Origin: Octopus sinensis
Lineage: Eukaryota
Direction of reading: 5' to 3'
Assembly (NCBI RefSeq): GCF_006345805.1
Contig: NC_043007.1
Location: forward strand, 64,356,001-64,420,000
Length of the DNA: 64,000 nt
The translations under genes were made by a program, and so were the position numbers. Below are positions 16,780 to 37,477 of this stretch, in pieces (the stretch's first letter is position 1; each line of letters opens with the position of its first letter). The notes beneath the pieces are model-generated. The model had not been told where the DNA came from and did no database searches. It was given only the letters and a program-made list of their open reading frames with translations.

Positions 16780-17345
16780 AGAGAATGGGAAAAGACATTA
16801 TTTTAATGAAAACAATAGGCATAGAAAGCTAAGCATAAAGAAATAAGAAAGGGTAGATAAATATATAGAGATATAAAGAGAAGATATCACATGATAAAGG
16901 GCAAAGATAATGTACCTTTCAGCCTGGTTTACACAAACAAGGGGATAGGAAAAAAAAAAATTAAGACTGACCGTCAAAGTGATCAATTCAAAACAATGGC
17001 TAGCTTGAAAAATGGGACGGTCATGTGGTGCCTTTTGGGAAAGGAGAGAGAGGAAGAGTAGAGGTAGGTAGAGAGTAAGATAGAGAAAGAGAGACAGATA
17101 GGGAGGGGAAGGGCCATTGCAGAGATAAAACAGCTGGGAAGGGTGAAACAAGATTAATAAAGTGAACAACAAAGATAAATGGATACAATAGCAGAAAGCT
17201 AAATGGATGTAAACATAAAAAAGAAAGATACATAGAGAAAAAGATAGAAAGATAATTAAGTGGAGCTGGTAGACAGAGTAAGCAATAGAAAGGTAAGTAT
17301 AAGGAAGAAGAGACAAGTGGACAGATGGATAGAGAGAGAAAGAGA
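16780..17345. repeat. Purine-rich (GA/GAA) low-complexity tract
   Basis: Direct reading; similar tracts at ~15000-15420, ~20200-20520 and ~22880-23060. Confidence 0.7.
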
Positions 17346-18406
17346 GGCCTCGAGTAAAAATCTCAAATTAAACACCAGGAGATGGAAAAACACCATTAAC
17401 CAGTAGAAAGGTCAATTCAAAAAAGAACTGGTGGTCTGAGATTCAGGAAGAAGGCTTCATGATGCCTTATGAGAGAGGAGAAAGAGAAAGGTACAGGTGG
17501 GTTGACAGAGAAGGAGTGCCATTGCTGAAATAAAACAGAGTATGGATGCAACTGGTACTGTTGGTTACAATGATGAGAGTTCCAGTTGATCCGATCAATG
17601 GAACAGCTTGCTTGTGAAATTAACATACAAGTGGCTGAGTACTCTACAGACATTTACCCTTAATGTAGTTATCAGAAAGATTCAGTGTGACACAGAATGT
17701 GACAAGGCTGGCTGTTTGAATTACAGGTACAACTAATACAAAGATAGTTATGAAGTGAAAATGATGGACAATGAAAGCAATAAGGAAGTATAAAGAAAGA
17801 ATGAAATCATCATCTAATATCTGTTTTCCATGCTGGCATGGGTGGGATGGTTTGACAGGATCTGGTGAGCCACAAGTCTGCATCAAGCTCCAATGTCAAC
17901 TTTAGCATGGTTTTGATGACTGGATACCCTTCCTAACATCAATCATTTTAGAGTGTGTACTACGTGCTTTCTTTGTGCTACCAGCACTAGTGAAGTCACC
18001 AAGTAACTTGCAAGACAGGAAAAGAACACAAAAAGGTAAAAGTCCCTAAGTGGAGAGGGAAATATTTGAGGAGGGTGGAGGTGAATTTATGCCAAGTGTT
18101 GGTGGGTAGTTTAAATGCAATAAGGAACAAGCCTGTCTTGCTATAGTGAAGATACATGGCTAGCCTACATGGGACAAAAAGATTGTAGTGATGGGGAGCG
18201 AGAGCAAATACTTAAGGAGCTATATATCAGATATAAATAACCAATCAGTTATGGCTGCATCGTAGATTTTCTTGATGGAGCTAACAACTCCATGAACACA
18301 AATTAAAAACTATTGTAAATCAGAACACTTACACATAATGTCTGGTTGCAATAAGGAAAAGGAAATTTACAAGTTGTGTGGCAACTAATTGGTTGTATAA
18401 ACTTAC

Positions 18407-18454
18407 CGCAGCTGAAATTCGGTGTTCATTTGACAAAGTGGATACATGAGTTTC
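18407..18454 (-). CDS. MOCS3: MOCS3 exon 10 (48 nt)
   Basis: ETHVSTLSNEHRISAA fills exactly the 16-residue gap corresponding to human CRSLQLLSPEERVSVT. Acceptor ttttcAG, donor GTAAGT, phase 0 on both sides. Confidence 0.8.
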
Positions 18455-21400
18455 CTGAAAATATATAATGACCAAAATTTAATGATACTTGGCTTTGAAG
18501 GAGTTATTGTGTTCCAAGACAAAAGTACATCATTCCATTCGTGTTTTATGAACCTAACTGAACACAAAATTATATTTGCCACATCACAATTTATCAGAAA
18601 ATATTATAAAAAGTTAAAATAAAAAACAAGCAAAAACATTGATATTAAGTCATTACCATAATTGGCTTAACATTGACCTTCCAGTGTGTATACAACAGTT
18701 TCTCAAACTGGTTCTTTGCTTCATGTTAAAGCCTCACATCTTAAGAGTTAATTACTTTGTCCTAAATCTTTCTCAGCCTGCCTCTGCTACCTTAACCAAT
18801 TCAAGAAGTACTTTGAATTCAATATATACATATTGGTTTACATGTCCACACCAACTTTATCTGGTTATCCTTTACCCTCACACTTGAAGTTCTGTACAAT
18901 TTATGGCTACAAATTCTGCTTCCTCAGACCAACAAAAATATAAAATGAGATGTTTATCGCATACACCAAACAATTATTTCAAATGTACATGTGTTTAGTT
19001 TGTCATTCGTGTTCATGCTTCACATTTAATATTACATTCATCATATAATGAAGGATTTATCTCTTCACTGCATTTGTTTATCATTTCTGTTCATCCCATC
19101 TGGACATTGGTATCATACAATAAACTTTCCATGTCATTTAGTGCCAGTCAGTCCTAATCAAGTAGATCCATGATCAGAGATATTCCAGAACTGGCCATCT
19201 TATTTATCCAACATCATAAAGTGATATCCAAGAGAGATTTGACTGCTATTCCTAGGAGGTTGAGCAGCCATGTAGAAACTTCCATCATGAATTCCTTTGT
19301 TACTTTCAAAAGTACAACTCAAAACATTAAGCTATAGTGGGTTATATCACCCCTCTAATTAGATTACATATCAAAATTTTACCAAATACAACCAGCTAAT
19401 TAACATTGCTTGTTAAGAAATTTAAATTGTATTTCAAAGACTGATTCTAAAATAAAATAATTCAATACAAGCAAATGCGACAGCAAAAATATATTGGATC
19501 AGGGCAAAAGAAGCTGAGTATGAAAAGGCAATGTGAAATCACCCATGCTTATGTTTAATCTCCAGAATCATCAAGAGATGAATTTTGATTTTATGGTTTT
19601 ATAAGCAAAAACATGTATGTGCTATATTTAGACATGCATATATTTCAACTAGAGGCATTCAACATTGCATACATTCTACTATATCTTTCTTTGCTGATAA
19701 CAGTCTTATGGTAAAGATTTTACTCAAAGAAAGAAACTTAAAAAAGTATTTCTTTCTTCATATTGGTCATATATAGCTACAAAAACTACTGCCACCACAA
19801 CTACCAACAATTAATGAGCTTCTTAAACAACTGCTCAACATATACTTGCCTTAGAGGGAGTGCTTTGTCCCTGGCAATTCTAAAGAGCATTCTCTAGCCT
19901 TGTTTCTGATGAGGCAATCTTTCAAGTCCTTTCTAACTTTATGTCTTCATTCATTTGTCAATCCATTTAGAGAGTGTACTGGGTGCATTCTGTTGTGTCC
20001 CCAGCAAGACTTGTATCCTCACTGCCTACATTGCCACCACCCATTCACCAATTACTTTACTGAGTGTATTGGGTGCAATTTATTGTGACACCAGCATTAA
20101 CCAGGTTGTTTCATTCCCAGCAATACTGGAGTTTTCTGTATTCTGGTTTCCCTCTTCCCTTAATTATCGTCATACACTCATTCCTTTCTTTCCCATACAA
20201 CTGATGGGAAAAAGAGTCAGAGTGGAGGAAAGAAAGAATAGAAGCAAGAGGATGATAAAAGAGAAAGCAAGGGAGTGGTAGATAGCTACATGATTGTTGT
20301 TTGTAAGGAGATTGGATAGAAGCAACATGACCAAATGGGTGATAGGAGAAGAGTAATGGAAGGGGACCAGATTTATATGAATGAGAGGGAGAAAGAGAAA
20401 GAAAGTAAAGAGTACATGATGATGGAAAATGGATTGAATAGAAACAGCATAAGCATTATGATTGGAGGCAGTGCACACTATAAAGTGAATGATGAATGAA
20501 AAGAGACAACATATAGTAGGAAGGACTAGAGAGATTGCCTTGTTGCTAGAACAGACTCTTTAGCCTTGCTAGAAACAAGACATCCATGAACAATAAGGGA
20601 GTAATGAGAGAAACAACAGGAGAGCAATGACTGGCAATAAAGGATGATGGTGAAAAAAATTGAAGATAAACAAATTCAACTTGATATCATCCCACATCAT
20701 GCAGATAATGTGATGGGAGAGAAAAGTGATAGAAGAGAGACACATTGATAGAAGGGTGAATGAAAGATGAGGAAGTAATGAAGACAGAGGGAGAGTGGTA
20801 AATGCAGGCTCAATATGAACTTAATAGTAATGAGCAACCCACAGATATTACAATCCTAATCCCCATGACCACTACCATCATTTTTACATATATTTTTCCT
20901 GGCTCGCAAGTTAGGTAGTTCCACTGCAGCATAGCATTTCACAAGTCACAGGCCCCTGTCATCTCCCTTATGAGGTTCTACTTCTCAATATTAGTCTTCA
21001 CTACTTTGTCCAATGTCTTCTTTGGTTTCTCTCTTCCACAGATTCCATCTATTTGGAGCATTCAGCATTCTTTTATAGTATGGACATACTCCATAGGCAA
21101 CAGTGTAGTCTTTTACATCCAGTTTTCCACTCACCCTCAGCTCATTTGTGTTCCATCACTTATGCAAACTAACATTCTACATCCAGTACAGCCAGCTTGA
21201 CTCATTTCTTTTCAGCTTTCCTGAATCCTCTGCATTCAAGGTCTGTGTCTACAATGCATCATTACATTTCACATACTATCATTGTAAATCTGTCCATCAA
21301 TCCTTGTTGCTAGCAGAGGTAATAGTATGCTAAACTTTGTTCACTCAGTTCTTATTCTGGAACTATGCTTTAAAACATTTACACTACTAATCTGGTCACC

Positions 21401-22419
21401 TGCATAACAAAAGCTACCTCAATTAATCTAGTTTCCAGGAATAAGTACATGTTCTTCAGGAAATGTTCTGTGAATGTTGTTTAGCGTTACAGCTCCAGAT
21501 TAGTCCTGATTGAGTAGTCCTAAAATCAAAGATGTTCCACATGTTACAATCCCATCTTTACTTCAGCAAAGTATATTTACAACCACATTATCCCAATGTG
21601 TTCTTCCTTTTTTAAGGGAGATTTGACTGCTCTTTCTAGAAGGTCATATAACACATGGAGGCACCATCCCTGGCTCATGTTCTGTGAATATATTTTCATT
21701 GAATGAATTTATCTCTCATCAGTATAACAGTGTGGGATTTGGTATATGGGTCATTGTTGAATGGTATTAGCCATATGTTGTTACATAATAAACCAAATGT
21801 GAAATTTGTTGAAATACATTTTATTGTTATTGAAGTCATTTACAATATTTACATTTATACATAAAAGTTTCCCAGTAGTTGCTAATAGTGTACTGTATAA
21901 GGCTATAATTGGACATAGCTGTAATTAAATTATGGATAGAATGATTAGTATCATGTGAGAGGCAAACTCCAGGCTGAATTTCAGCAAAGAAAAACTTGAT
22001 GTTGTAAAGACTAGTTGCTTATGCTTCAAAGGGCTGCTCTTTGTTTGATCTAGTCAGCTTCTACCTTTATAACTACAAAAGCACAGGAACCTCTAGAACT
22101 TTGTAGAATGTTCTATATGACATAAGATTTCTGCTAGCTGATTGGTTAATAACCAGAAAACATCACCTGGCATGAGTGTGGTCTTGTACTGGTAACTAAA
22201 ACTGTGAGATTTTTATTCTAGGTCTCACTACAACAGTATTGAATCCAGAGCTCATGAAGACATCATTTATCATTAGACACATACACACATTGTTGAACAG
22301 TTTATAACAACCAACAACAAAAACAACCTTAATGCAAAAAAACATTTCATCAGGTGTCTGTTCCAGAGAATAATGGTAAATTTTGTGAAAGGAAGAATAG
22401 CTACATTATAAAAACCTAC

Positions 22420-22580
22420 CTTATCATTTGATCGAGAGCCACAAAACTGTTCGTAGTCTATCAGCTCTGGTTTTGACCCATCTCCACAAGCAATGCAGTT
22501 CTTTTGACTAGGACGAAGTTTTACTTTGTGAAACGAGCAATCCATACCATCAAACAGAAGTAAGTGCTGTTTCAGAGAAG
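22420..22580 (-). CDS. MOCS3: MOCS3 exon 9
   Basis: (S)SLKQHLLLFDGMDCSFHKVKLRPSQKNCIACG...LIDYEQFCGSRSNDK contains the second CxxC. Acceptor gccttaacaatagatttAG; donor GTAGGT. Confidence 0.92.
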
Positions 22581-24390
22581 CTAAATCTATTGTTAAGGCA
22601 TAATGCATTTACCATATTACAGTTGTCTTTGTGTTTACAAATTTATGCAAATATGTGACAGGTACAGGAAATTAATTATAAAAAGAAAAAAGGATGAAAG
22701 TGTGGATATGTGGTTAAACAGTATGTTTTTCAAATGCATTTCTGTGTTTGATACTATAGCACTAATGAATGACTTAAACTTTGTAAGTGAAATTTTTGTA
22801 TCATTCTGTCTTATTAATAATATTAACATGCCAATTTATTCTTTTTATACATATGGAACTGTGGCATGAGTCACACTTACTTCGGAGGAAGGTGTGAGTG
22901 ACAAAGCAAGAAAAAGGTAGTGAGAGAGAAAGAGAGAGAGTGAAAGAGACAGTGAATGGTAACGGTGTTTCTTTTGTGTTTTTAAATGTTTCAGAGAGGA
23001 AGTAAGAGAGAGTGAGAGAGAAAGAGTGAGTGAGAGAGAAAGAAAGAGAGAGTGAAAGAAATAGTGAATGGTGACAGCGTTCATTTTATTTTTAAATGTT
23101 TATCACATCGCAAGGAAAGTAGACACATAAATCGAAAGAAAAGTTGATACATACACACATTGTTAAATTAAAAGCAGGAGAGAGGAGAGACACAAAGAAA
23201 GTGAGAGAGACAGTAGATACATAGATCAAAAGAAAAGTTGATATATAGATACATACACACATTGTTAAATCAAAGACAAATAACTACAGCAAATACTGGA
23301 TGTCACTTTCACTTTTCATTACCACATGAGGATAAAATTAACTTGCAAGTGGCTGAGCACTCCATAGATATGTATATCATTACCTTAGTTTTCAGAGAGA
23401 TTCAGCCTCACACAGAACAACTCATTTTGGCCAACTGAATGGACTGGAGCAAGATAAACCATCAAGAAAAAGATCCTATACAGGGGCAGGAAAATCCTTT
23501 TAGTCATTAGGGTCACCATGAGTGTTAATCAGGTCCTAACAGCAGCCTTTGTGGGTCGCACAGATCTGGAAGCCAAGCCCCCAGATAAACACCAATGAGC
23601 AGGCTGTTGTTATCAAACTGAGCATGAGTCAAAGGTAAATACACAACAGAACAACAATTATTTTGTCGTAGCTTTCACTGCTTATACTAAACACATGACG
23701 TTTTTGCCTTATGATATGGAACATTTCCTTTCCTTTCACTCTTTTTTAAAAAAATGGCACTCGGTCAGTTGTGATGACAAGGTTCCTGTTTATCTGATCA
23801 ATGGAACAGTCTGCTTGTAAAATTAACATGCAAGTGGCTGAGTACCCAACAGACATACATACCATAAGGTAGATTCAGGGAGATTCAGCCTCACACAAAA
23901 TGTGACAAGGCTGGCCCCTTGGTTTTGCCAGCTGAGTAGACTGCAGCAAGGTGAAGTAGAGTAATTTGCTCAAAAACACGGTGCGCCACAGGGAATTATA
24001 CTCATGACTTTACGATCATGGGCTCAATATCCCTAACCACTTAGCCACATATCTGCACTCTATTAACTGTAGAGAAAAGGAATGAGGCGATAGAGACAGA
24101 GAAAGGAAAGCCTCAGTCATTTACAATGACAATTATACTGAAATACAATTGATCTTTTCTAGCTTCTTTACTTTTAACAATGAAGAAGAGGGAAAGACAT
24201 TTAGTAAGGAATAGAAGGAAAGACTAAAGTGATAGTATGTTGTCAACTTAATGTGACAGTCCCATGAAAGGGAAGAATTCCACTGTTATTTAGCCCAAGG
24301 AAACACCATTTCCTGTTGGACTTGACACATTTCCTGTGTCCTTATGTTTTCAAAGTGGAGATAAGCACCTCCACCCAGCAAAGCCAGCAT

Positions 24391-24431
24391 CCAGAGACTA
24401 GTTTCAGAGTCATTGCTCATCATCAGTCTGG
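24391..24431 (-). ncRNA. Minimal type I hammerhead ribozyme-like motif (Penelope-type)
   Basis: Minus strand reads CCAGA-CTGATGA-TGAGCAATGACTCT-GAAA-CTAGTC-TCTGG: perfect 5-bp stem I, both core boxes, GAG/CTC stem II with an unpaired T on each side, palindromic stem III and a GUC triplet. Confidence 0.65.
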
Positions 24432-24894
24432 AGTAGAATGGCTTGCTAGCTGAATTTTTTTATTTAGACAATAATGTCACATATAGATAATACAGCACAG
24501 GACAACACATACAAATGAAGTTAATGTGAGTTCAAATGAACCTTATTTGAAAATTTTAATGAAAAGATGAATTTTATATTATATAGTCTTTTTTTTTCTC
24601 CCTTTGCCTGGAAAAAAAATGACCTAATTATTCAAAAAGAAAAAGAGTAACAGGATTAGATAGAGCGAAAAATGGGCTTTAAAATGATATATAAAGTGAT
24701 ATATATATCATAAAATGATATATAAAATGATATATACATCATTTAAAACCAAAATTAAAAATTCCAAAAGAGACAACCTAATAGAAAACCAGAGCCAGAG
24801 ATGAAGGATCCTGTCACGAGTCCTTGCATTCTAGTTTTCCACACACATTCTTTCAGCACAGCAACTGTACAGAAAAAAAACATACTTCACCTTC

Positions 24895-25160
24895 ATTATT
24901 TACATTCGATGGATATTTGTCCTCATTTTATTTGTTGTTAACACAACGTTTCGGCTGATATACCCTCCAGCTTTCATCAGGTGTCTTGGGGAAATTTTGA
25001 ACCTGGGTTCTCATTTCTAAGATATTTTTTGATATTATTACTATTCTTATTGTTCACGTCACTGCTTGGAATTGAACTTAGAATCTTGGGTTTAGTAGCC
25101 CATGCTCTTAACCACTACGCCATATGGAGTGAATTTAGGGCTTATAAATCTAATATTTTG
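24895..25160 (-). mobile_element. Penelope-like element 3' end (pseudo-LTR) with tRNA-like segment and hammerhead motif
   Basis: Reverse complement matches ~36580-36860, which directly follows a GIY-YIG ORF. A/B-box-like segment at 25058-25127; hammerhead-like motif at 24940-24985. Confidence 0.75.
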
Positions 25161-25567
25161 TATGAATAGATTCAGTAGGTAGAAACTGAAAGATGACCAT
25201 TGTATATTTACACATATGCATGTGTGTTTTACACTTGTGATTGCTTGTACAATGCAGCAGGTATGATGTCAATTTCTCTTGTCAACAAATTATCCAATCA
25301 CATCGAGCCTTTGAAACCATGTGGAATAAGAGATGTTTTATTCAAAAAACAGATAAAGATTCATATCAGGAAGGGCATCTGGCTGTAAAACAATGCCTCA
25401 GATAACATATTCATCAACCCAAGCAACTATGGAAAAATGGACATAAAACAAATGTATCAATATTTGCATATTCTAGACTTTACCAAACTGTCAATAGCTC
25501 CTAAAGTAAAAAAAATACTGATATAGATCAGACAAAATACAATTATCAGCTGTCATTTGAAGGATAC

Positions 25568-25630
25568 ACTGTAAACCACAAGCAATTTTAATGACTTCTA
25601 AGGCCTGTAAACATCCAATAATTCCAGGAA
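25568..25630 (-). CDS. MOCS3: MOCS3 exon 8
   Basis: (I)PGIIGCLQALEVIKIACGLQ; 63 nt; acceptor ttttttcAG; donor GTATCCTTCA (U12-type). Confidence 0.93.
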
Positions 25631-25851
25631 CTGAAAAAAGATAACATTATCATCATCATATCAGTAATTATCATTATCATTAATGACTACTGTCATTAAT
25701 GTTCGTTTTTTTCCCTCCTATTCTGGCAGATGAGATATAAATGAAATGGATAGTTCTAGCAACCCTTACAATACTTCACTCAACATTAAACCAGCCAATC
25801 AATAACAATAATAATGGTTTCTAATTTAGGCAGAAGGCCAGCAATTTCTAT

Positions 25852-26001
25852 TGTGCCATACAAGTAGTCCAATAACGCAATGCAGAGTGGTTGGTTGTCT
25901 ATTCGACTGCTGTTCCCCTAGCCACTGAGCTGACCACCTTTTATCAGCGACAGTGTATTTAACAATGTGAAACTAAGTACATTTAGTTTCGTATCATTAC
26001 A
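25852..26001 (-). repeat. 3' LTR (150 bp) of a Gypsy-like element
   Basis: Direct repeat of 28626-28776 (14 substitutions and 1 indel by eye). Minus strand starts TGTAA and ends CACA; a polypurine tract AAAGGAAAGGTGGA lies just upstream on the minus strand (~26005-26018). Confidence 0.8.
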
Positions 26002-26099
26002 ATGTCCACCTTTCCTTTAAGCAATTCACAGACAAATAAAACTGACAAATGAAAATAGGGTTTCTTCTCCCTCAAAGAAAGAAAAAAAAAACTGTTTTG

Positions 26100-27692
26100 T
26101 TGCAAGAGCAATACGCAACATGCACTTCAAATAACATGAACAGTTTTATGGTTTTTGTAGTGCTCCGGTGTTTTCAATGTTCTGCCTAATCTTGTGATTC
26201 TTCTGGGGGTTGGCATTGAGCACTTCTCATGCATCTAGCCATTATTTTGTGTTTCTGTGTTGTTATCAGGAGGAGCATGTGTAATTTCTTTCCTTGAGTC
26301 AAGTTGAGTAACATGTTCCATAGAGTTTGTAGGGTCTGCTGGATGGTTGTCTGTCTCTATATTGTAGGGTGATCTGGCAGGTGTTTCCATCTGACTGGTC
26401 TGTTCATACTGTCTGTCTATGTCTATGCTAGTATCTCTCAGTTCTCTTCTGTTTCTCTTCTCTGCAAATCTCCATGCATTGTTTTCACAATGTAAGACTT
26501 TGGTTCTTTACATTGTCTTGCTTTTCTCCAGGTATCCAACATTTGTTGTTTTTGTCAAGGATTCATATAGCTTGTCCTTTGTGCAATGGAGGTAATTCCA
26601 TCTTTGCATGCTGGTCATATGCAGTTTTCATTTGTATTTTCTTTTCTTCAAGAAGTCTTCTCTGTCTTTGAGTTTCATGACAATAGCTCCAGTGTAATGG
26701 CACAAGTGTTGCCCAATAGGATCTCAGCAGGTGACGGCATCTTTGAGTTAAATGGTGTGGCTCTTAGATTCAACAATGCATTGTTTATGTTTGCTTTGCT
26801 TTGTTCACATTTTTGGATTGTCTTTTTAATTATCTGTACCTTCTCTCTATGAATCCATTTGATTGGTGATGATGTAGTGTGTTGAATTCTCCATTTCTGT
26901 GAATTGTTGAAATGGTTTTCCGGTATATTGAGGACCAATGTCACTGAAAATTTCATCAGGTCTGCTGAAGAGAGACATAGTCTTTTTGAATTCCTCTGTG
27001 ACTGCTTTGCTTGTGGTTTCGCTGAGGTGAGATACAATTGGAAATATGAAGTAGTCACAAATGAGCAGATAAGTTTTGCTGTTGATTTCAAATAGATCTG
27101 TTCCTAGTTTTTTTCATGGTGCACTGGGAATGACATCAGTGGTTCTTTGTTGTTGGCAGTTGCAAATTCTTGGCATATTTGACAGGATCTGCATTTCTTC
27201 AATGTCTTTGTTGATGTTTGTCCAATAGACATCTTCACAAGCTGTACTAGAATGTCATGTTGTATCAACACTTGTGTCCCTTCGAAGCTGATTCCATCTT
27301 CTACAACCAATTCATCTCAAAAAGACCAGTATGTTTATGTCATCTAAGAGTTGTTTGATGCTGTCCGGTCACCCATAGGTGATTGTTTCCATCAGTGTAG
27401 CCAAAGTAGAATCTCTGCTGGTGAACTCATGCAGTTGGTAACGTTTGTTGATGGAAAAATTGACAAGGTCAAATTCAGATTGGTGGATTTCTCTTGCAGT
27501 CAATTCAATCCCATCCACTTTCAAATCCAGGTCAATGTCTTCATTGTCTTCATGGTTTGAGAGGTAAGAGAGGGTGTCGGCCAATGTCATGGTATGAATT
27601 GGGCAGTATTTGATTTTGAAACCATATCCCTGAATTTTTTGGAGCATCTTTTGTAGTCAGCATGGTGCTTGAAGAAGGGGTTTTTCTGTGAT
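26100..27692 (-). mobile_element. Decayed Gypsy-like pol remnant (end of RNase H, integrase zinc finger, core and C-terminus)
   Basis: Fragments LQKMLQKIQGYGFKIKY...LADTLS, C..CQ.CQE, QHTTSSP...VQIIK and LLNLRATP...SPAEILLG, with many frameshifts. Confidence 0.8.
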
Positions 27693-28630
27693 CCCCATCA
27701 GGTGCAATACTATATGATAGCTAGTAATGGACACAGTTGCTCTATGAAAGTCAGATTTACAGTTCTCTGTTCTAAGAACCTAGCTAAAAGATATTTCTTT
27801 AGGTTACCAGATTCTTGTGCCAAAATAAATGTTAATGGTTCAGAGCAGTGCCACTCAACAGAACTTTGTAAAAATACTCTTGATCCTAAGTGGAACCAAC
27901 ACTATGACTTATATATCGGCCAAAAAGATTCTGTTACCATAAGTATTTGGAACCATAAAAAGATCCAAAAGAAACACGGCACTGGCTTCTTCGGATGTGT
28001 ACAAATCACTTCCAACAGTTGAAAGATACTAGCTTTCAACAGCTGGAATTACAGAAAAGAAATGCAGATTATCATAAGCCTTATATCCAGAGACAAAGAT
28101 AGTTCAGCCCCTGCTACCATTATCACACCTTCTATTCAGCCAGTTATACTAAATGACCCCAATGAACTTCCTGATGGCTGGGAAGAAAGGACAACTGCTG
28201 ATGGTAGATTTGAGTTTGTCAACCAATGTTACAAGAACAATTTGCTGTGAGCAACCTACAAGGCCCGCATCAGAAACACCATCCAAACGTTTATCAACTG
28301 CCATTATCTCAGATCCAGCTGTGGTCATGTCTCCTGATAAAGAGACCACTGGCAATGTCAGAAGTAGTAATAGCCAAAATACCAGTAATACTGGTGACAG
28401 TAATAGCAGCAGCAGTAACTGTACAAGTGTAAACCACAGCTCGTCAGCAAACAACAGTAGCAGCAGTAACAACAACACTCCTTCTATAGCTACAAACAAT
28501 AACAACGGAATGAGCAGTAGTAACAACACTGGTGGTGATGGCAATAATAGTTTGGGTATGTTCTCCAGAAGACAGTCTATGCGGCACTGAAATTACTTGA
28601 ATAGATTCCATTGCTATCATCAGATTGTGA
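27693..28630 (+). pseudogene. SMURF2: Processed (intronless) 5' fragment of the Smurf HECT E3 ligase: C2 domain, first WW domain and N/S-rich linker
   Basis: KVRFTVLCSKNLAKRYFFRLPD...CHSTELCKNTLDPKWNQHYDLYIG..DSVTISIWNHKKI...GFFGCV matches Smurf1/2 C2, followed by LPDGWEERTTADGR (WW1). Contiguous with no introns; premature stop at 28020-28022, frameshifts and deletions; ATG at 27714. The symbol denotes the family, not a specific paralogue. Confidence 0.9.
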
Positions 28631-28776
28631 CATACAAGAACTCCAATAACGCAATGCAGAGAGGCTGGTTGTCTATTTGACTGCTGTTCCCCCTAGCCAC
28701 TGAGCTGCCTGCCTTTTATCTGTGACAGGGTATTTAACAATGTGAAACTAAATACATTTAGTTTCGTATCGTTACA
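28626..28776 (-). repeat. 5' LTR (151 bp) of the same Gypsy-like element
   Basis: Direct repeat of 25852-26001 with TG...CA termini on the minus strand. Confidence 0.8.
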
Positions 28777-29084
28777 ACAATTTCAAAAGGAGTGGTTTAG
28801 TAGTTACCATCATTGGAGAGATAAAAAGCATTTTGTCTGTCACTCTAATGATTCTGCCTATTTACAGTCTGTGCACAAAGCCAACAATTTTGAGTAGAGA
28901 GATTTACTCAATACCATCATCCCTGGGATTTGACTGGTACTTTATTTTATCAAACTCAGAAGGAAGGCAGAGTAAATGTTGGCAGAATTTGAAATCAAAA
29001 TGTAAAGAGCTGGAAGAAAAACTACAAGGGATTTTGTTTGATGCTCTAACGATTATGTCAATCTACTGCTTTCATAATTGTTTC

Positions 29085-29712
29085 TAATTTAGACACAGGA
29101 CCAGTAATTTTAGGGGAAGAGGTTAGTCAAATCAATCTATGAATTTGACTGGTACTTTATTATTTTATCCACTCTGAAAAGATGAAAGGAAAGTTGACTT
29201 CAGTGGGATTTGAACCCAAAATATGAAGAGCCAGAACAAATACTGAAAGACATTTGCTTGATGACCTGATGATTCTGCCAACCCACCAATATTAACAATA
29301 ATAATTCTTTCAAATTTTGGCACAAGGACAGCAGTTTTGTCAGGAGTAGAAAATCAATTACATAGACCTGTGCTTTACCTGTACTTATTTACCTCAAGAG
29401 GATGAAAGGAAAAATTGACCTCAGTGAAATTTGAACTCAGAAAGTAAAGATGGACAAAATGCCACTAAGCACTTTGTCTGGCATGCTAATGATTCTACCA
29501 GCTTGCCACCTTAACAACAATAATAATAATGCTTTTTTTTATTTAGGCACAAGGCCAGCAATACCATCAACCCAGTACTTAACTGGTACTTATTTTATTG
29601 GCTCCCAAAATGAGGAAACCCAAAGTTGACCATGGTGAGGTTTGAATTCAGAATGTAAAGAGTGATAAAAAATACTGCAAAGCTTTTTGTCTGATATTCT
29701 AACAATTCTGCC
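29085..29712 (-). mobile_element. Three head-to-tail copies of the ~200-bp SINE-like family
   Basis: The block TTTAG/GGCACAAGG(A/C)CAG...GGAAA(A/G)TTGAC...TTTGAA repeats at ~29085, ~29303 and ~29538; another copy at ~33640-33840. Confidence 0.7.
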
Positions 29713-29745
29713 AAATAATAATATAAATTAAATATAAATACTTAC

Positions 29746-29854
29746 TCACGCCCAAAACCCCTCCATCTGAGCAGTTAGTTACTGTTTCTGGTAAAGGAGG
29801 CTGAGGGAAGAGACAGCGGTAACAGGGACCTCCATCATAGTTGTAAACAGTCAG
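29746..29854 (-). CDS. MOCS3: MOCS3 exon 7
   Basis: [36 protein letters not shown] contains the first CxxC and the conserved TNC Cys. Acceptor tttacAG; donor GTAAGT. Confidence 0.95.
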
Positions 29855-29971
29855 CTGTAAAACAAAATAAAACTATGAATGCCAATCAGGCTTTGATTTG
29901 TTTGGTTTATTTGTTAATCTTTAATTTTAAAGTTAACTTAGTAGATTATCAATTAGTAAGTTTTATGTAGT

Positions 29972-30290
29972 GAGGGCGCGTGGTTTAGTGGTTAGGGCAT
30001 TCGGCTCATGATCGTAAAGTTGTGAGTTCGATTCCCGGCGACGCGTTGTGTCCTTGAGCAAGACACTTTATTTCACGTTGCTCCAGTCCACTCAGCTGGC
30101 AAAAATGAGTTGTACTTGTATTTCAAAGGGTCAGCCTTGTCACTCTCTGTGTCATGCTGATTATCCCCGAGAACTACGTTAAGGGTACACATGTCTGTGG
30201 AATGCTCAGCCATTTGCACGTTAATTTCACGAGCAAGCTGTTCCGTTGATCGTATCAGCTGGGACCCTCGTTGTCGTAACCGGCGGAGTC
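29972..30290 (+). mobile_element. tRNA-derived SINE (second family)
   Basis: A-box TGGTTTAGTGG and B-box GTTCGATTCC, then TGTGTCCTTGAGCAAGACACTT. Inverted fragments of its tail occur at ~17555-17720, ~23340-23450 and ~23760-23990. Confidence 0.8.
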
Positions 30291-30593
30291 TTTTGAAGTT
30301 TTATGTAAAGAAGGGATTTTTTAAATCTTTAATATAAATAAAATAGATTTAATAAAAGAGGAGAAACATGCTCATTTACATTTAATGAAGATAAAAAAAA
30401 ATATTCTGCTTTGTATTTTTATCTTTTAAATATGTGATCCTATTATAACCATAATCATCAACAGTAATGTTAATTCCTCTCACTACTACATGCCCATTAT
30501 CACAACCTGCGTTATAACTTCCACTGGCACGATTATAAATGTAGAGTTTTCATGCCATTAACACTGACATTGTTGCACTCAAGTTTCTTTTTA

Positions 30594-31865
30594 TTAGGTC
30601 ATCAAGTATGAAATTTGTAGAAAAGAAAAAAAAGTTTGCTAATGTTTTATAAATACAAGGAATAGTTTTATTCATCAAAGTATGTACCCATATCGTCAAT
30701 ACACTTTTGCCATTTCAGCGATAGCTTATCCTGCCTGGAACTGTAAAAGCCTGGCAATCTTGAATCAATAAAATCTTGGAAGGCTTGTTTTACAGCATTG
30801 TTGGAATTAAATTTTTTTTCTTTCAAAAAGTTATCCAAATTCTGGAAGAAGTGGTAGTCAGTGGGGGCAAGATCAGGTGTGTATGGTGGATGATGGAGAA
30901 CTTCCAACTCCAACTCCTGAAGTTTCGCAAAAGTCATTTTTGCGATGTGTGGTTTGGCATTGTCTTGCGATAAAATAGGAGTGGATCTATTGACTAATCT
31001 AGGCCGTTTCTTTCGTAAGTTTCTGCATCATTTGGTCCAGTTGGCTGCAGTATACTTCGGCTGTGATTGATGAGCCAGGTTTAATGAAATCAGAATGGAT
31101 CACACCTACATCAGACCACCAAACACACACCATTAGCTTCTTTTTGATGAATTTCGCTTTTTATACTGTGTTTTGGTGGCTCGTCTTTGTCTAACCATTG
31201 TGCTGAATGTTTACAGTTGTTGCATTGGATCCATTTTTCATCACGTTACAATTTGATTACAAAATAATTCATTTTTGTGACAAGAAAGTAGCATAATGCA
31301 GGCTTCCAAACTTTGCCGTTTCAGATTTTCCTGGAGTTCATGTGGAACCCACTTGCTCAACTTTTTCATTTCACTGATTTGAACTAGGTGAGTCAATATT
31401 GTTTACTTGCAAACACCGAACAACAACGCTAATTCATGGGCAGACTTGACAGTGGCTTTCAGTTCATCATTATCCACCTTTGCTTCTGGTCGGCCGCGTT
31501 GCTCATTTGTGAGGTCAAAGTTACCAGAACGAAATTTTGCAAACCAATTTGATACTGTCTACTGTGTAATAACATTAGAATGAAATACTCCATTAATATT
31601 CCGAGTTGTCTGTGATACTGTATATCCAAGAAAGAACTCAAATTTCAAATCTGTACAAATTTCCGACTTATCCATCTTTTAACAAAAATAGCAAAAAACA
31701 ATTTATGAATACTTTATAAATTGCAGAATAAGTTAGAATAAAGAAATAGATGTATCAGCTTTGTAACAAAAAATAAAGATTGTCAAAATATAATAAAGGC
31801 GCAAAATGAGCAGCTGTCAAAGATTACCATATACCTTACTACAAATTTCATACTTGACAACCTAA
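30594..31865 (-). mobile_element. Full-length but inactive mariner (Mos1-like) transposon, 1272 bp
   Basis: 27-bp TIRs TTAGGTCATCAAGTATGAAATTTGTAG / CTACAAATTTCATACTTGACAACCTAA (2 mismatches) with TA on both sides. Transposase pieces WFAKFRSGNFDL..E.RGRP and HPPYTPDLAPTDYHFF; stops and frameshifts. Confidence 0.92.
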
Positions 31866-31982
31866 TAAATGTGTAAGGCCCCTACCTACCTGTATTTGTA
31901 ATAAATACATGAGTCAGATTTTGGGTGGTGTATTCTAAATGCAGTCATTTTTTTTTCTAGTTTTTCTGTCCAGTTCATTTAA

Positions 31983-32495
31983 CCCCTTGACAATGGTTGA
32001 TGCAAATATGCGATCACACTTTTGCTTGCCTACCCACGGTTAACGTAAATATATGATGTAGAGATGCCCTACATCTATCACAAACTTTTTAGCGGCTGAT
32101 GTATGTTTATGTTTGCTATTGTGTACTTTATCTCTTTAGGTGCATGCGCTCTCAGCCCCGTGCATTATCTTAGCTATTTTAGGTTCAAGTCATGAGACTA
32201 GCAGTAGACCAATGACATGTGGATACTTTACGTGCATAATACCGTGTTTTGAGTTGTACCACACACAAGTTATTTTTTTAACTTGAGCAGAATAACTCAT
32301 GCATATCATATTATGATAAATAGCTTCATATAGTTCGTTTTCATAAACCGGGAGACATAAATGTACGATGCTATGTTATTGTAACGGTGAACATAAGTAG
32401 ACGCGAGCTCGTTGGCACTTGTGTTTTTGTGTGGCCTCGTTAGATAAAAAAAACCCAGTGTCTTGCATGCTTCGGGTAATATTGGCGTCAAGGGG
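31983..32495. mobile_element. Non-autonomous piggyBac-type MITE
   Basis: TTAA|CCCCTTGAC ... GTCAAGGGG|TTAA. Confidence 0.75.
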
Positions 32496-32866
32496 TTAAC
32501 ATTCAGTTGAGAATGTTATAACTACAACTTATTAGTAAGTCATTTAGAGTATTGATGCCTATAATCTTTTATTTGCATTTAACTCTGCAGTAATTATTAA
32601 TATGTCTATAATATTCCTTCCTAATCTTTCATGTGTTTCTGTTGTACCTTGTTTAGTACATTGAATCCTAAATATTCCTGCATTTGCTCTAATTTTTTTA
32701 TCTGTATATTATTTAATGTTATTAGTGTTCTTGATAAATTTTCCCCTTTTCAAAGTTGCCATGACACATTTTTCAAATTTAAATTTTATACAAATTTCTC
32801 AAATAAAAAAAAATCCCTAAAGCAAATAAAACAAGTGTCTTCAAATAGATTGAAGAACAAACTCAC

Positions 32867-32984
32867 CTGTCCTTCAAATCGTAGAGCACTACCAGAAACC
32901 AGAGGCTTGCCAGAGATGACACATGCATCATTAACAAGGTATCGTGTGGCAACATTGTCAGAGGCATCTATCACAATGTCATAA
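32867..32984 (-). CDS. MOCS3: MOCS3 exon 6
   Basis: [39 protein letters not shown]; donor GTGAGT. The 5' boundary is inferred from frame and homology because no AG is present (see findings). Confidence 0.92.
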
Positions 32985-35360
32985 CACAGATAAGTTAAGG
33001 AGAGCAGAATAATAGGATGGTTTAACAGAGCAATGTGAATAACAATTTATGATATGAATAGAAAACTTTAGTCATATTTTTTTCATAGGTTAGTTACAAA
33101 GACTATACCCATGATCTTTTCCAGGTCCTTTGGGATTGTAAGCAGAGAAGTTATTCTCAGTCCAGAGAATGCTGAATGCTGACAACAGAACTGATTCTGT
33201 TAAAAGTATCCAATAACCAGGTGCTAGTATTAATCAAGGCAATGTGTTAAAACTACTGTCTATCTAAGAACTGGTACAGTCCCCCTGTCAGACATCCATA
33301 AAATTTCTACCAAACGAATTACACTCACAAGATTTTAGTTGACTTACAGCTATGGAAGAAGATATTTAAACACTTCAAAGTGTAGAGTAGTGAGATTAAA
33401 TCCAAAACCATAGTTGTGAAGCCAAAACTATTCTTTACATCAACACAAGAAAAGGAGATATAGTAATTCAAATTGATTCCAATATATTACTGATATTTAT
33501 TTGATTAACACCAGAGTACTGAAGAACTCATTCCAATCCTTTTGATGTTTTAACATGTATAGTTGAGGTATTGAGGTCAGATTAAAGGTAGGTGTAATGT
33601 ACTACTAAATATTACATTTTAATACTGATATTTTCAAATTATAGCATAAGGCCAGCAGTTTTTAGTGGGAGGAATGATAGTTGATTATATCTACCCAAGT
33701 ACCTGATTAGTATTTTTACATAAAGGATGAGAGACAAAGAGGCCTTTCGTAGTGTTTGAACTCGGAACATTAAAAAAATCAGGAGAAATGCTGCTAAGTA
33801 TTTTGTCTGACACACTAATAATTCAGCCAACTCACTGCCTTCCATCTTAATACTAATAATAATAAATGTGAAACCTGAGGTCTTTTACAAATGTGAACGT
33901 TGGAATACTAATGCAAGGGCTTAAAAAAAAAACAAAGAAAATAGTTCCAGCTAAGGATTTAATTGAATACCTTAAATGCCACACCATGGTGATAACTAGT
34001 GTGAAAGGGAAGAGGTTAGAAGTCCTCCCATGACAACTAAGCTAAAACATGTTAAGCTGCTGAAGTGATGATCAGAAGGTCAAACCTTGACATGGATACC
34101 TTAGTAAAAGTACATCACCTAAGGCTGTAAAATAAACATCAATTTCATTTCACTTTTGGATACACAATGTAACTTTTGGTACATATGGAATAGATATGTC
34201 AGAGGTGGCAGAGTCATTCAATCCATGTTGATTAAATACTAAAATACATGTTAAACTATTAAAACAATATATTGTTATTTAGTTCTGGCCAGTAGATCTA
34301 TGGACAAAGTATTTTAAACTGTGACTATTCTTTCTATTTTCACACAAGTATATTCAAGTGTACATTATGCCAAGTGTCATCCCTTCTTTAAGAGTGTGTT
34401 ATTTGTTTTAGCAAGTCAAACAACTACCTTTCACACATTCATTCACTTGTTGTACCTGGAAGCAAAGTGTGTGATTCTACTTGCCTAAATTTGCCTAGCT
34501 TTGATTTCAAACACACACACACGTATATATGTGTGAATTTCTGCTAGCATGTTTGTCAGTCAGTCTTATTGTCTATCTGTCTGTTTGAAAACTAAATCGC
34601 AAAAGCTTTTATTTTCACCACCATCAGTCACCATTGCTTCTATCACATTCACTACACACAAGCATGCATGCACGCATGCGCATGCATGCACACACGCACT
34701 TCAAATCAACAATCCCTAGGTAAATTTTACATTTTCAAAACTATCTTAGCCATTCTATGGTAGGAAACTGGATGTTAATGAGAAAAACACTTTTTAAAAA
34801 ATGATTTTAATATTCTAATTCCCATCCAGTCTCCATTGGCATAGATGATAGAGAGATGGATTACATATATTCATCAAGGTTTCAATTTTAGAGTTCCATA
34901 AAAGTAAACTTTGCCTTTAATCTAATTAAAGGAATAGTAAAATATCAGTTATGTTAGAAAAATAGCATAGGAGGATCAATACATTGCAATAATATAAAAA
35001 GATTATACATACAACATTAATATAGTAGGGTCAATACATAGTAGTAATGTAGGAGGCTCAGTACACATAGCAGTAATTATAGTTGGGACACTAGAAATGT
35101 AGTAGTGATATAGTAGCCTCAGCATACATAGCAATATTGTAAGATCAATATACAGAGCAGTAATATAATAGAGTTTACACACATAGTAGTAATATAGTAG
35201 ATTTAATACACATAATTATACACTGATACATATTTAAGATCCGTTTCCCAAAGAAAAGTTAATGGAACCAGTTAAAGATCCCTCAGTATATTTTGGTAGA
35301 GAAAAGATTGATGCTAAATGTTCCACATTTGAATAAATAACAGAAATATCAGTTTTATGT

Positions 35361-35402
35361 CTCTCTGATGAGGTCATAATAAGACTGAAACACATGCAGA
35401 GT
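35361..35402 (+). ncRNA. Degenerate minimal hammerhead-like motif
   Basis: CTCT-CTGATGA-GGTC-ATAATAA-GACT-GAAA-CACATGC-AGAG: stem I and stem II are present, but the U of the GUC triplet is missing. Confidence 0.45.
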
Positions 35403-35606
35403 TGTTTTTTGTAACTGCCAAGATAATGAAAATAACACTAGTCATGGTCAAATACTGTTTTCTTTTCTCTCACACTGCATAATTCATTGTAGTTAACATT
35501 TTTTTTCTTAAATTCTAACACAAATTTAACCATTGTCAGACAATTGATTAGGTTATAATTATTCAGTCAAATGATCCACCAAAGTATAGAAGCAGTTAAA
35601 GGATAC

Positions 35607-35681
35607 TGTTGAATTATCTCAATGGCATTGCTGCTGGACAACTGTAAATGGTATGGTATATACTGTACACTGGAGTTTAGT
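35607..35681 (-). CDS. MOCS3: MOCS3 exon 5
   Basis: (Q)LNSSVQYIPYHLQLSSSNAIEIIQ; 75 nt; acceptor tttgttAG; donor GTATCCTTTA (U12-type). Confidence 0.92.
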
Positions 35682-35749
35682 CTAACAAAGGAGAAAAATT
35701 TGTGAAAAATTCAAATCAAAACAAAACACAGTATACAGTCTTATAAATC

Positions 35750-36860
35750 TCTGGCCCCACCAAGAAGATGTCCAAGTGCTGTTAGATCATGTGAATTCAA
35801 TAAAGTCATCCATACAGTTCACAATGGAAAAGGAAAAAGACAATCAGCTAGCAAGTATGGATTCAGGACATCCGTACACCACAAGATGACCTTCACTGGA
35901 CGATACCTCAATTTTAATTCCCACCATCCATACGGTGTAAAGAGAGGGATTGCTCAGTGCCTAAAACATCGTGCAAAGAATATAAGTAGCGATCGTGATA
36001 CACACTACGAAGAAATGATCAAGCTCAGTAACAATCTGATAAGCAGCAGCTACCCCAAAAACATACTATCCACTCCAATTATGAAGAAGAGAGAGGATGA
36101 AACCGATAAACTGTCCACAGTCTGTTTACCTTATGTGAAAAGCCTCTCTGAAAAGATACAAAAGATATGTGGCCCCTGATGATTACATCAGGACAGTATT
36201 CAAGAGTAATACAACACTTTGCAAATATCTCCTTTGAGTAAAACCACCAATAGAAGAGAATATGACCAAAAACTGCGTGTAGTCCATCCCATGCAGCTGT
36301 GGTATGTTATACAAAGGCAAAACATGCCGGCCCCTCAAAATAAGGGTAGAGGAACATAGCAAATCTGTGATAAATTGAGTATAGCTGATCATGTATGGAA
36401 AAATGGAGACCAACTCCTCCAGTGGGATGAAGTTAAAATAATAGACAGAGAACACCACTGGAAAATATGAAAATTAAAAGAAGCAGCACATATGCTAGGA
36501 CACAACAACCTCCTAAGCAGACCGAGTACAGATCTGAATAACATATGGGAACCAGTATTAAGGAAGGATAGGAAAATATTAGATTTATAAGCCCTAAAAT
36601 CCACTCCATAATTGCCCATGGGCATATGGCGTAGTAGTTAAGAGCGTGGGCTACTCGCCCCAAGATTCCAAGTTCGATTCCAGGCAGTGACCTGAATAAT
36701 GATAGTAATAATATCAAAAAATACCTTAGGAATGAGAACCCAGGTTCAAAATTTCCCCAAGGTACCTGATGAAGGTTGGTGGGTATATCAGCCAAAGCGT
36801 TTTGTTAACAACAAACAAGATGAGGACAAAAATCCGTCAAATGTAAATAATGTATTTTTT
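35750..36860 (+). mobile_element. 5'-truncated Penelope-like element (RT C-terminus, GIY-YIG endonuclease, 3' pseudo-LTR)
   Basis: Pieces IQFTMEKE, TGRYLNFNSHHP, LPYVKSLSEKI, SIPCSCG.LYKGKTCRPLKIRVEEH, IADHVW and KLKEA; contains stops. Confidence 0.88.
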
Positions 36861-37195
36861 GTTTGCTTGTTTATTGATTTTGCATATTATTTGTAAGTAA
36901 AACCGCTGGATTGAAATGTTTCCAGTTGAATTTATTATTTATTCACTAATTACTGTTTAGAACTTTATATCTAATAGGTGGCAACTTTTTTTCAGCAAGA
37001 CAGTGGAAAGCGAAAAGATATAATAGCTCTAGCAGATTTAAATCCATGAGTATTTGGTCAGGAATTGGAGACATTAACTTTATAGTGATATTAACATATT
37101 AACATGTTCAAATTTGCTGAAAAAGGAAAAAGTGTCTTTTTGTAATGCTAACATGGAGAAATTAACAGTGAGCAAGCAATAAAAGGAAATCTTAC

Positions 37196-37316
37196 TGAGC
37201 ACAAGAAGTTGCTAAGGATGCAGTTTTGGAGGTACCAACTCTTTTCTCTGTATGAAGAATTTGTCTGTGTAAATTATTGAGTTCAACATCATCATAATCT
37301 ACAACACCAAGCCTAC
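37196..37316 (-). CDS. MOCS3: MOCS3 exon 4
   Basis: (G)[39 protein letters not shown] carries the ThiF/MoeB NLHRQ motif. Acceptor gttccAG; donor GTAAGA. Confidence 0.95.
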
Positions 37317-37477
37317 CTGGAACAAAAAATAAAACAAATTAATACCTTTCTGAAAAATACAATCAACATAAAATGTATACAGCTTAAATAATTTTATTTG
37401 GACACATTACTTCTGATATTGAATACTCTCTTTTTCTCCTCCTTGCATACTCTTGAAAGTTAAAACATGCACATATT

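What the first reader, a model, noticed from the sequence alone, without database searches (positions are those of the whole stretch)
32975..33005. U12-type intron 5 of MOCS3 appears to end in TG (GT-TG intron)
Seen: the minus strand reads ...attctgctCTCCTTAACttatctgTG|t tat gac att gtg ata gat. There is no AG between the branch motif and the exon, nor in the ~30 nt upstream. Joining exon 5 (...caa ca) to 32984 gives EIIQ-H-YDIVID, with 25 residues from LNS to the conserved Tyr, the same count as human [27 protein letters not shown]. Established: the minor spliceosome sets the 3' site mainly by distance from the branch point and tolerates unusual terminal dinucleotides better than U2. Inference: this is a real non-canonical GT-TG junction in a housekeeping gene, or an allele or assembly error at 32986.
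Basis: partly seen in the sequence, partly recalled or inferred. Interest (0 to 1): 0.75.

Follow-up and report, generated by a model that had tools for sequence, protein, structure and literature searches.

The report
Octopus MOCS3 minor intron ending TG
Intron 5 of the octopus housekeeping gene MOCS3 is an ancient minor-spliceosome (U12-type) intron whose 3' end changed from the usual AG to TG in octopods and has stayed that way in four species; this is a genuine but already catalogued rarity, and it has caused at least one wrong public gene model.

Summary
On the minus strand, intron 5 of MOCS3 starts with a perfect U12 donor (caaca|GTATCCTTT, 35606) and has a perfect branch motif (TCCTTAAC, 33001-32994). 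It ends ...ttatctgTG| at 32986-32985, 10 nt after the branch A, with no AG for 81 nt upstream.

The window is the Octopus sinensis reference. My hand-spliced 448-aa protein using this junction is identical to RefSeq XP_029642587.1.

The TG is not an assembly error or an allele. It is present in O. sinensis, O. vulgaris, O. bimaculoides and Argonauta hians, although the rest of the intron has diverged beyond BLASTN detection between Octopus and Argonauta.

The same intron, at the same position and phase and with a U12 donor, is GT-AG in abalone, scallop, chiton and Lingula, and AT-AC in sea urchin. So the TG is derived in octopods.

It is the only junction that reproduces the conserved protein: Y and D follow it in 117 of 119 orthologues. 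The O. vulgaris public model avoids it and loses 32 conserved residues.

GT-TG minor introns are a known, very rare class (29 of about 73,700 conserved animal minor introns). I found no direct RNA reads.

Verdict: real; a new member of a known kind; modest interest.

The parts
10006..44331 (-). MOCS3/Uba4 gene: 12 coding exons, 448 aa. Exons are e1 44331-44236, e2 40019-39878, e3 38568-38476, e4 37316-37196, e5 35681-35607, e6 32984-32867, e7 29854-29746, e8 25630-25568, e9 22580-22420, e10 18454-18407, e11 12023-11924, e12 10226-10006.
   Evidence: tblastn exon map. Spliced CDS of 1347 nt with an open frame. The product is identical to RefSeq XP_029642587.1, O. sinensis MOCS3. The window is 100% identical to GCA_006345805.1 CM016869.1 over 36,326 bp.
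35607..35681 (-). Exon 5 (LNSSVQYIPYHLQLSSSNAIEIIQ + CA of the His codon); it ends in phase 2.
35598..35606 (-). U12-type 5' splice site GTATCCTTT of intron 5.
   Evidence: Exact match to the RTATCCTT consensus at the exon end. Conserved as [AG]TATCCTT in all 8 species mapped.
32985..35606 (-). Intron 5: 2622 nt, U12-type, GT-TG.
   Evidence: It is the only donor/acceptor pair that reproduces the protein (nopts=1).
32994..33001 (-). U12 branch-point motif TCCTTAAC. The second A, at 32995, is 10 nt from the last intron base.
   Evidence: The distance is the same in all four octopods (Argonauta has TCTTTAAC).
32985..32986 (-). Terminal TG dinucleotide of intron 5, the non-canonical 3' splice site.
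32867..32984 (-). Exon 6 (T of the His codon + [39 protein letters not shown]).
   Evidence: 14 of the 17 Octopus-Argonauta differences fall at third codon positions, including base 1 of the exon.
32976..32977 (-). In-frame alternative AT acceptor at +9, 19 nt from the branch A. It would delete Y-D-I (rival explanation).
32889..32890 (-). AG inside exon 6 that the O. vulgaris public model (CAI9730102.1) uses as acceptor. This deletes 32 conserved residues.
   Evidence: P0003 reads IIQH|ALRFEGQ; coordinates.
22581..25567 (-). Intron 8, a second U12-type intron (GTATCCTTC ... CCTTAAC + 12 nt ... AG).
10227..11923 (-). Intron 11, a third U12-type intron (GTATCCTTT ... TCCTTAACagaaAG). Only 7 nt separate the second A from the 3' end.

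Best explanation
Intron 5 of Octopus sinensis MOCS3 is a genuine minor-spliceosome (U12-dependent) intron of the rare GT-TG subtype.

Proposed mechanism. U11 snRNA recognises the donor GTATCCTTT. U12 snRNA pairs with TCCTTAAC and bulges out a branch adenosine. The 3' splice site is then taken at the position about 10 nt downstream, where the terminal G is kept to partner the 5' G, while the penultimate base is U in place of A. The join CA|T restores a His codon and the invariant Tyr-Asp that follow.

Evolution. The intron itself is ancient, at least bilaterian. It was GT-AG in the mollusc ancestor. The A-to-T change at position -2 was fixed before Octopus and Argonauta diverged, and the TG has been retained since.

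What is shown: the sequence, the orthology, the conservation and the coding constraint. What is inferred: that U11/U12 carry out the splicing, and that the TG is the site used in RNA.
For: 1. The donor and the branch motif are perfect U12 matches, placed exactly at the exon boundaries.
2. The branch-to-3' end distance is 10-11 nt, next to the published optimum of 11-13 nt (PMC3584512).
3. There is no AG for 81 nt upstream. The nearest downstream AC (+7) and AG (+17) both shift the frame into immediate stop codons.
4. The TG is present in four species and four assemblies. In Argonauta the neighbouring bases differ (caaTG|C against ctgTG|T), and the rest of the intron gives no BLASTN hit against Octopus.
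5. An orthologous U12-type intron sits at the identical position and phase in Haliotis, Pecten, Liolophura and Lingula (GT-AG) and in S. purpuratus (AT-AC).
6. Sixteen unidentified genomic ORF fragments read through the homologous acceptor. The residue before YD is Arg, Ser or Thr, never Cys or Trp.
7. 14 of the 17 Octopus-Argonauta substitutions in exon 6 are at third codon positions, including the first exon base (CAT/CAC, both His), with only 2 of 40 residues changed.
8. Y and D after the junction are each present in 117 of 119 orthologues, and the spacing is unchanged.
9. RefSeq XP_029642587.1 (O. sinensis), XP_014770747.1 (O. bimaculoides) and the A. hians model all use this junction.
10. 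GT-TG is a catalogued minor-intron class.
Against: I obtained no RNA-seq read, EST or transcript contig from any octopod that spans the junction. Searches of the protein collection found no octopus transcript-derived fragments. The public models that use the junction could in principle rest on protein-homology alignment and not on RNA. The 3' region is pyrimidine-rich (70% over the last 40 nt), so the 3' side alone does not exclude the major spliceosome. The papers reporting mutational analysis of U12 3' dinucleotides (Dietrich 2001, 2005) were not available to me. Secondary summaries speak of GT-AG and GT-AT as functional pairs and do not mention GT-TG.
Confidence: 0.85

Rival explanations
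1. Assembly error or segregating allele: the true sequence at 32986 is A, so the intron is an ordinary U12 GT-AG.
For: A single-base difference would be enough, and every non-octopod lophotrochozoan orthologue examined has AG.
Against: The TG is identical in O. sinensis, O. vulgaris (about 98% identical to the window, so a different genome), O. bimaculoides and Argonauta hians. In Argonauta the flanking bases differ but the TG is kept.
Confidence: 0.01
2. The minor spliceosome actually uses the in-frame AT at +9 (32977-32976, 19 nt from the branch A). That would make a GT-AT intron and a protein lacking Tyr-Asp-Ile. Alternatively it uses both sites.
For: GT-AT is a more common U12 subtype than GT-TG. 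A distance of 19 nt looks usable, because orthologues of this intron place the 3' end 8-14 nt from the branch A and U12 3' site choice is reported to be error-prone. I recall a published usable range reaching past 20 nt but could not check it here. The AT is conserved in Argonauta.
Against: It would remove a Y and a D that are each present in 117 of 119 orthologues. The nine bases TTATGACAT are conserved in frame across octopods, with only a synonymous change at base 1, whereas the intron bases at -3 and -4 differ. Three public models use the TG. The AT lies further from the distance optimum than the TG does.
Confidence: 0.05
3. The intron has converted to a major-spliceosome (U2-type) GT-TG intron, like the U2-like TG acceptors described in human GNAS and TSPYL2 and in Drosophila.
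For: U2-type GT-TG introns exist. The last 40 nt are 70% pyrimidine.
Against: The donor ACA|GTATCCTTT is a perfect U11 site and a poor U1 site. The branch motif is a perfect U12 match at the U12-typical distance, and both are conserved in Argonauta despite complete turnover of the intron. U2-type TG acceptors usually accompany a nearby canonical AG, and none exists here for 81 nt upstream.
Confidence: 0.06
4. The O. vulgaris model is right: the acceptor is the AG inside exon 6 (32890-32889), giving a protein 32 residues shorter.
For: It is a canonical, in-frame AG, and a public annotation uses it.
Against: It lies 106 nt from the branch A, many times the 11-13 nt optimum. It deletes 32 residues of the ThiF-type adenylation domain ([32 protein letters not shown]), a segment kept at 2 amino-acid changes in 40 between Octopus and Argonauta and retained in the other orthologues. 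The same model also mis-splices the last exon.
Confidence: 0.02

Closest known systems
GT-TG (GT-NG) subtype of U12-type minor introns, as catalogued by Sheth et al. 2006 (PMC1557818), Larue & Roy 2023 (PMC10639083, Suppl. Table S1) and the Minor Intron Database counts quoted in PMC13602164
   Same: A U12 donor and branch motif, a 5' GT, the terminal G kept, and a penultimate base that is not A. It differs from canonical GT-AG by a single base, as most non-canonical minor introns do.
   Different: This is a new instance, in a different gene and phylum from the mouse and human cases. Here it can be dated (derived from AG, and fixed across Octopodidae and Argonautidae) and it lies at an intron that is AT-AC in a deuterostome. 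I could not tell whether this very intron is among the 29 animal cases counted by Larue & Roy, who included O. sinensis among their species.
Subtype switching of orthologous U12 introns (Sheth et al. 2006, Table 3; the BANP GT-GG and ACTR10 AT-AG examples in Parada et al. 2014)
   Same: Orthologous minor introns change terminal dinucleotides one base at a time, while the donor and branch motifs stay fixed.
   Different: One intron position here shows three states across Bilateria: AT-AC, GT-AG and GT-TG.
U2-type GT-TG introns (GNAS, TSPYL2; 23 cases in Drosophila)
   Same: A TG acceptor.
   Different: Those have U2-type donors and nearly always a nearby alternative AG. This one has U12 signals and no AG within reach.

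Membership tests
U12-type (minor spliceosome) intron | 5' splice site matching [AG]TATCCTT directly at the exon end | tested here: met
   GTATCCTTT at 35606-35598. Conserved in all orthologues mapped.
U12-type (minor spliceosome) intron | Branch-point sequence matching TCCTTAAC/TCCTTRAY | tested here: met
   TCCTTAAC at 33001-32994. Argonauta has TCTTTAAC.
U12-type (minor spliceosome) intron | Short branch-to-3' splice site distance (optimum 11-13 nt, PMC3584512) | tested here: met
   10 nt from the second A and 11 nt from the first A, identical in four octopods. Orthologues range from 8 to 14 nt.
U12-type (minor spliceosome) intron | Orthologous introns in other lineages are also U12-type (positional conservation) | tested here: met
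   Same position and phase with an RTATCC donor in Haliotis, Pecten, Liolophura, Lingula and S. purpuratus.
U12-type (minor spliceosome) intron | Removal depends on the U11/U12/U4atac/U6atac snRNPs | not testable with these tools
   This needs snRNA knock-down or blocking, or a minigene assay.
GT-TG subtype of minor introns | Intron begins GT and ends TG in the genome, and this is not a sequencing artefact | tested here: met
   Four assemblies of four species.
GT-TG subtype of minor introns | The mRNA junction lies exactly after the TG | tested here: inconclusive
   It is the only junction that reproduces the conserved protein, and it is used by the RefSeq and A. hians models. No RNA reads or transcript contigs from an octopod were found.
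MOCS3/Uba4 (adenylyltransferase and sulfurtransferase) | ThiF-type adenylation domain plus a C-terminal rhodanese domain, and orthology to annotated MOCS3 | tested here: met
   Top hits are annotated MOCS3 carrying PF00899 and PF00581. The product is identical to RefSeq O. sinensis MOCS3.

The most novel reading that the evidence does not exclude
The TG acceptor may not be a neutral variant. It could make intron 5 a slowly or conditionally spliced minor intron that limits MOCS3 output (tRNA thiolation and molybdenum cofactor synthesis) in octopods. Or it could reflect a lineage-wide relaxation of the -2 requirement in the octopod minor spliceosome, which would show up as an excess of GT-NG minor introns across octopod genomes.
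Probability: 0.08. Interest if true: 0.5.

Novelty: new member of a known kind. Interest (0 to 1): 0.3.

Why it matters
The find is a clean, datable natural example showing that the minor spliceosome does not need the penultimate A of the 3' splice site. The TG has been kept in an essential gene across an order of cephalopods, while everything else in the intron except the donor and the branch-to-3' block was replaced.

One intron position shows AT-AC, GT-AG and GT-TG in different animals, which is useful material for studying subtype switching.

It also has a practical side. Annotation pipelines restricted to canonical sites get this gene wrong. The O. vulgaris model lacks 32 residues of the adenylation domain, and an oyster model appears to carry 8 spurious residues at the same junction.

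Tried and rejected
The cluster look-up then showed it is the RefSeq O. sinensis protein.
- A 97-aa junction-spanning query and a 40-aa exon-6 query returned no octopod transcript fragments and no fragments from other cephalopod genomes. I therefore have no direct RNA evidence and could not tell whether squids, cuttlefish or Nautilus have AG or TG.
- The Logan transcript L004 (SRR27666071, 76% identical, species unknown) shows an uninterrupted ...AAAGA|TTATGAT... junction but comes with no genomic sequence.
- The look-up of a fish orthologue (P0047) and of the read-through fragment P0260 found nothing on record. The Ser/Arg/Thr read-through inference was therefore not verified at DNA level.
- Dietrich et al. 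2001 and 2005 and Levine & Durbin 2001 are not held in the library.
- A scan of the whole window against Rfam found nothing.
- A-to-I RNA editing, which is common in octopus, was considered and rejected. It cannot turn U into A or G, so it cannot restore an AG here.
- A donor/acceptor shift that would give the same mRNA with canonical ends was excluded. Only one donor/acceptor pair reproduces the protein (nopts=1).

Full report
**1. The observation**

The minus strand of the window reads ...attctgctcTCCTTAACttatctgTG|TTATGACATTGTGATAGATGCC... The TG is at 32986-32985 and the first exon base, T, is at 32984. The stretch without AG is in fact longer than reported: the nearest upstream AG is at 33067-33066, 81 nt before the junction.

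The upstream exon ends ...GAGATAATTCAACA at 35607. It is followed directly by GTATCCTTTAAC, a perfect U12-type 5' splice site.

**2. The gene**

A tblastn probe and manual refinement gave a 12-exon model on the minus strand (44331-10006). It encodes 448 aa with an uninterrupted frame.

- Eight introns are ordinary U2 GT-AG introns with pyrimidine tracts.
- Three introns (5, 8 and 11) begin GTATCCTT and have a CCTTAAC or TCCTTAAC motif close to the acceptor.
- These account for all three minus-strand GTATCCTT matches and both minus-strand TCCTTAAC matches in the whole 64 kb window. Chance placement can therefore be dismissed.

The product matches annotated MOCS3 proteins with ThiF and rhodanese domains. 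The spliced protein, built with the TG junction, is residue-for-residue identical to RefSeq XP_029642587.1, MOCS3 of Octopus sinensis. The window is 100% identical over 36,326 bp to GCA_006345805.1 CM016869.1. So the window comes from the O. sinensis reference genome, and NCBI's model already contains this junction.

**3. Is the TG real DNA?**

I fetched the orthologous loci of three other octopods: O. bimaculoides (L001), Argonauta hians (L002) and O. vulgaris (L003, about 98% identical to the window, so a different genome).

| Species | Intron 5 acceptor |
|---|---|
| O. sinensis, O. vulgaris, O. bimaculoides | ctcTCCTTAACttatctgTG\|TTATGAC |
| Argonauta hians | gctCTTTAACttatcaaTG\|CTATGAC |

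All four end in TG. In Argonauta the two bases before the TG differ, and so does the first exon base, yet the TG and the 10-nt spacing from the branch A are unchanged.

Apart from the donor and this branch-to-3' block, intron 5 of Octopus and Argonauta gives no BLASTN alignment at all. The block is therefore a conserved island in a fully turned-over intron. An assembly error or a polymorphism is excluded.

**4. Is TG the splice junction?**

- I mapped each orthologous protein onto its own locus and listed every donor/acceptor pair that reproduces the protein exactly. For intron 5 of the octopods there is exactly one such pair, so no ambiguity from repeated bases exists.
- Within reach of the branch site, the alternatives with familiar dinucleotides are AC at +7 and AG at +17. 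Both shift the frame into stop codons within a few residues.
- The only in-frame alternative with a known U12 dinucleotide is AT at +9. It would delete Tyr-Asp-Ile.
- The Tyr and the Asp are each present in 117 of 119 aligned orthologues, and 118 of 119 have the same spacing as the window across the junction.
- Between O. sinensis and A. hians, exon 6 has 17 nucleotide differences. Fourteen are at third codon positions in the frame set by the TG junction, including the first exon base (CAT against CAC, both His). Only 2 of 40 residues differ.

This is what is expected if translation runs from the base immediately after the TG.

**5. How old is the intron, and what did it end in?**

The same spliced mapping shows introns at the identical positions with [AG]TATCC donors in five non-octopod species.

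| Species | Intron 5 type | Acceptor region |
|---|---|---|
| Haliotis rufescens | GT-AG | cCCTTAACatgtaAG |
| Pecten maximus | GT-AG | TTCCTTCATaagatgccatAG |
| Liolophura (chiton) | GT-AG | aCCTTGACcgcagatAG |
| Lingula anatina | GT-AG | TTCTTTAACgacgaaaatcaAG |
| S. purpuratus | AT-AC | ATATCCTTTT...CTCCTTAATcggctggttacAC |

Sixteen short ORFs called on unidentified animal genomic contigs read through this acceptor. The residue before YD is Arg (8), Ser (7) or Thr (1), and never Cys or Trp. That fits AG or AC ends and not TG. This inference is indirect, because Ser and Arg also have other codons, and I could not check the DNA.

The intron is thus at least bilaterian in age. It has switched between the AT-AC and GT-AG subtypes. 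TG is a derived state shared by Octopodidae and Argonautidae, both in Octopoda: Incirrata. Whether decapodiform cephalopods share it could not be determined. The one probable non-octopod cephalopod sequence I found is a transcript without genomic DNA.

**6. Mechanism**

By the defining sequence features this is a U12-type intron. Established knowledge from the review PMC3584512:
- The 5' splice site and branch sequence define the class.
- Either A of the branch consensus can be the branch point.
- The branch-to-3' distance is short, with an optimum of 11-13 nt.
- No pyrimidine tract is required.
- Non-canonical termini are tolerated with reduced efficiency.
- 3' site choice is error-prone.

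The discussion in PMC4176328 summarises mutational work: a 5' G pairs preferentially with a 3' G. It attributes the relaxed 3' dinucleotide to the dominant role of the branch site.

I infer the following. U11 binds GTATCCTTT and U12 binds TCCTTAAC. The 3' site is chosen 10-11 nt downstream, where a G is available to partner the 5' G. The U at -2 is tolerated. None of these steps was tested here.

**7. Comparison with what is known**

GT-TG minor introns are catalogued:
- 1 mouse case in Sheth et al. 2006, Table 2.
- 1 of about 770 human introns in the Minor Intron Database counts.
- GT-TG is listed among the human G-type introns in the CENATAC study.
- 29 of about 73,700 conserved animal minor introns (0.039%), behind GT-GG (159) and GT-CG (46), in Larue & Roy 2023. 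That survey included O. sinensis among its species.

So this is a new, well-supported member of a known but very rare class, not a new kind of splicing. It differs from U2-type GT-TG introns, which have U2 donors and usually a neighbouring AG.

**8. Annotation consequences**

The O. vulgaris model CAI9730102.1 joins exon 5 to an in-frame AG inside exon 6 (32890-32889 in window coordinates). It loses 32 conserved residues of the adenylation domain. This is the kind of error that Parada et al. and Sheth et al. describe for non-canonical sites.

**9. What is missing**

I have no RNA reads. The protein collection holds no octopod transcript fragments for this region. The models that use the junction might rest on protein alignments. 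I therefore put 0.85 on the GT-TG U12 junction being the one used for the functional mRNA. The remainder is split among a U2-type TG acceptor, partial or exclusive use of the AT at +9, and the other rivals.

Noticed in passing
window 25567-22581 and 11923-10227 (minus strand), together with intron 5: MOCS3 carries three U12-type introns (5, 8 and 11) among its 11 introns. All three are conserved in position and type in abalone, scallop, chiton, Lingula and sea urchin. Clustering of minor introns in the same genes is documented (PMC7367187), but three ancient ones in a 448-aa gene is a notable case.
   Followed up: partly
window 10240-10227 (minus strand): In intron 11 the branch motif TCCTTAAC is followed by only agaaAG, so the second A is 7 nt from the 3' end. 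That is shorter than the 11-13 nt optimum. Argonauta has a different arrangement there (atccttcaccttcaaaAG).
   Followed up: no
L003 (O. vulgaris OX597824.1); window equivalents 32890-32889 and about 10160: The O. vulgaris model CAI9730102.1 is wrong twice. It skips 32 residues at the TG acceptor. It also splices out of the last exon at CAG|GTAAAT, ending ...DQDQEMKESQHWNI and losing most of the rhodanese domain.
   Followed up: partly
P0046 (Saccostrea echinata RefSeq MOCS3-like), at the exon 5/6 junction: This is the only one of 119 orthologues with an indel at this junction. It has 8 extra residues, ITFLTLCI. T-F-L-T can back-translate to a TTCCTTAC branch-like motif, and the Ile codon before Tyr implies an intron ending in AT. 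This may be another non-canonical end at the same intron, handled wrongly by the annotation. The DNA was not examined.
   Followed up: no
window 27669-28250 (plus strand), inside MOCS3 intron 7: ORF fragments on the opposite strand match the Pfam C2 domain (E = 8.8e-13) and, weakly, the WW domain. They resemble the N-terminal part of a NEDD4-family ubiquitin ligase. They could be a nested gene exon or a pseudogene fragment.
   Followed up: no
window 40707-41192 (plus strand) and 30668-30937 (minus strand): Transposase remnants lie inside MOCS3 introns. One is a DDE_3 (Tc1/mariner-type) fragment in intron 1. The other is a mariner-like ORF in intron 6 (HHPPYTPDLAPTDYHFF...) with no Pfam hit at E <= 0.01.
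   Followed up: no
L008 (S. purpuratus), intron 5: The sea urchin orthologue of this intron is AT-AC (ATATCCTTTT...CTCCTTAAT...AC), whereas the lophotrochozoans examined have GT-AG. So the intron has switched between the two main U12 subtypes, a change reported as rare between vertebrates.
   Followed up: partly
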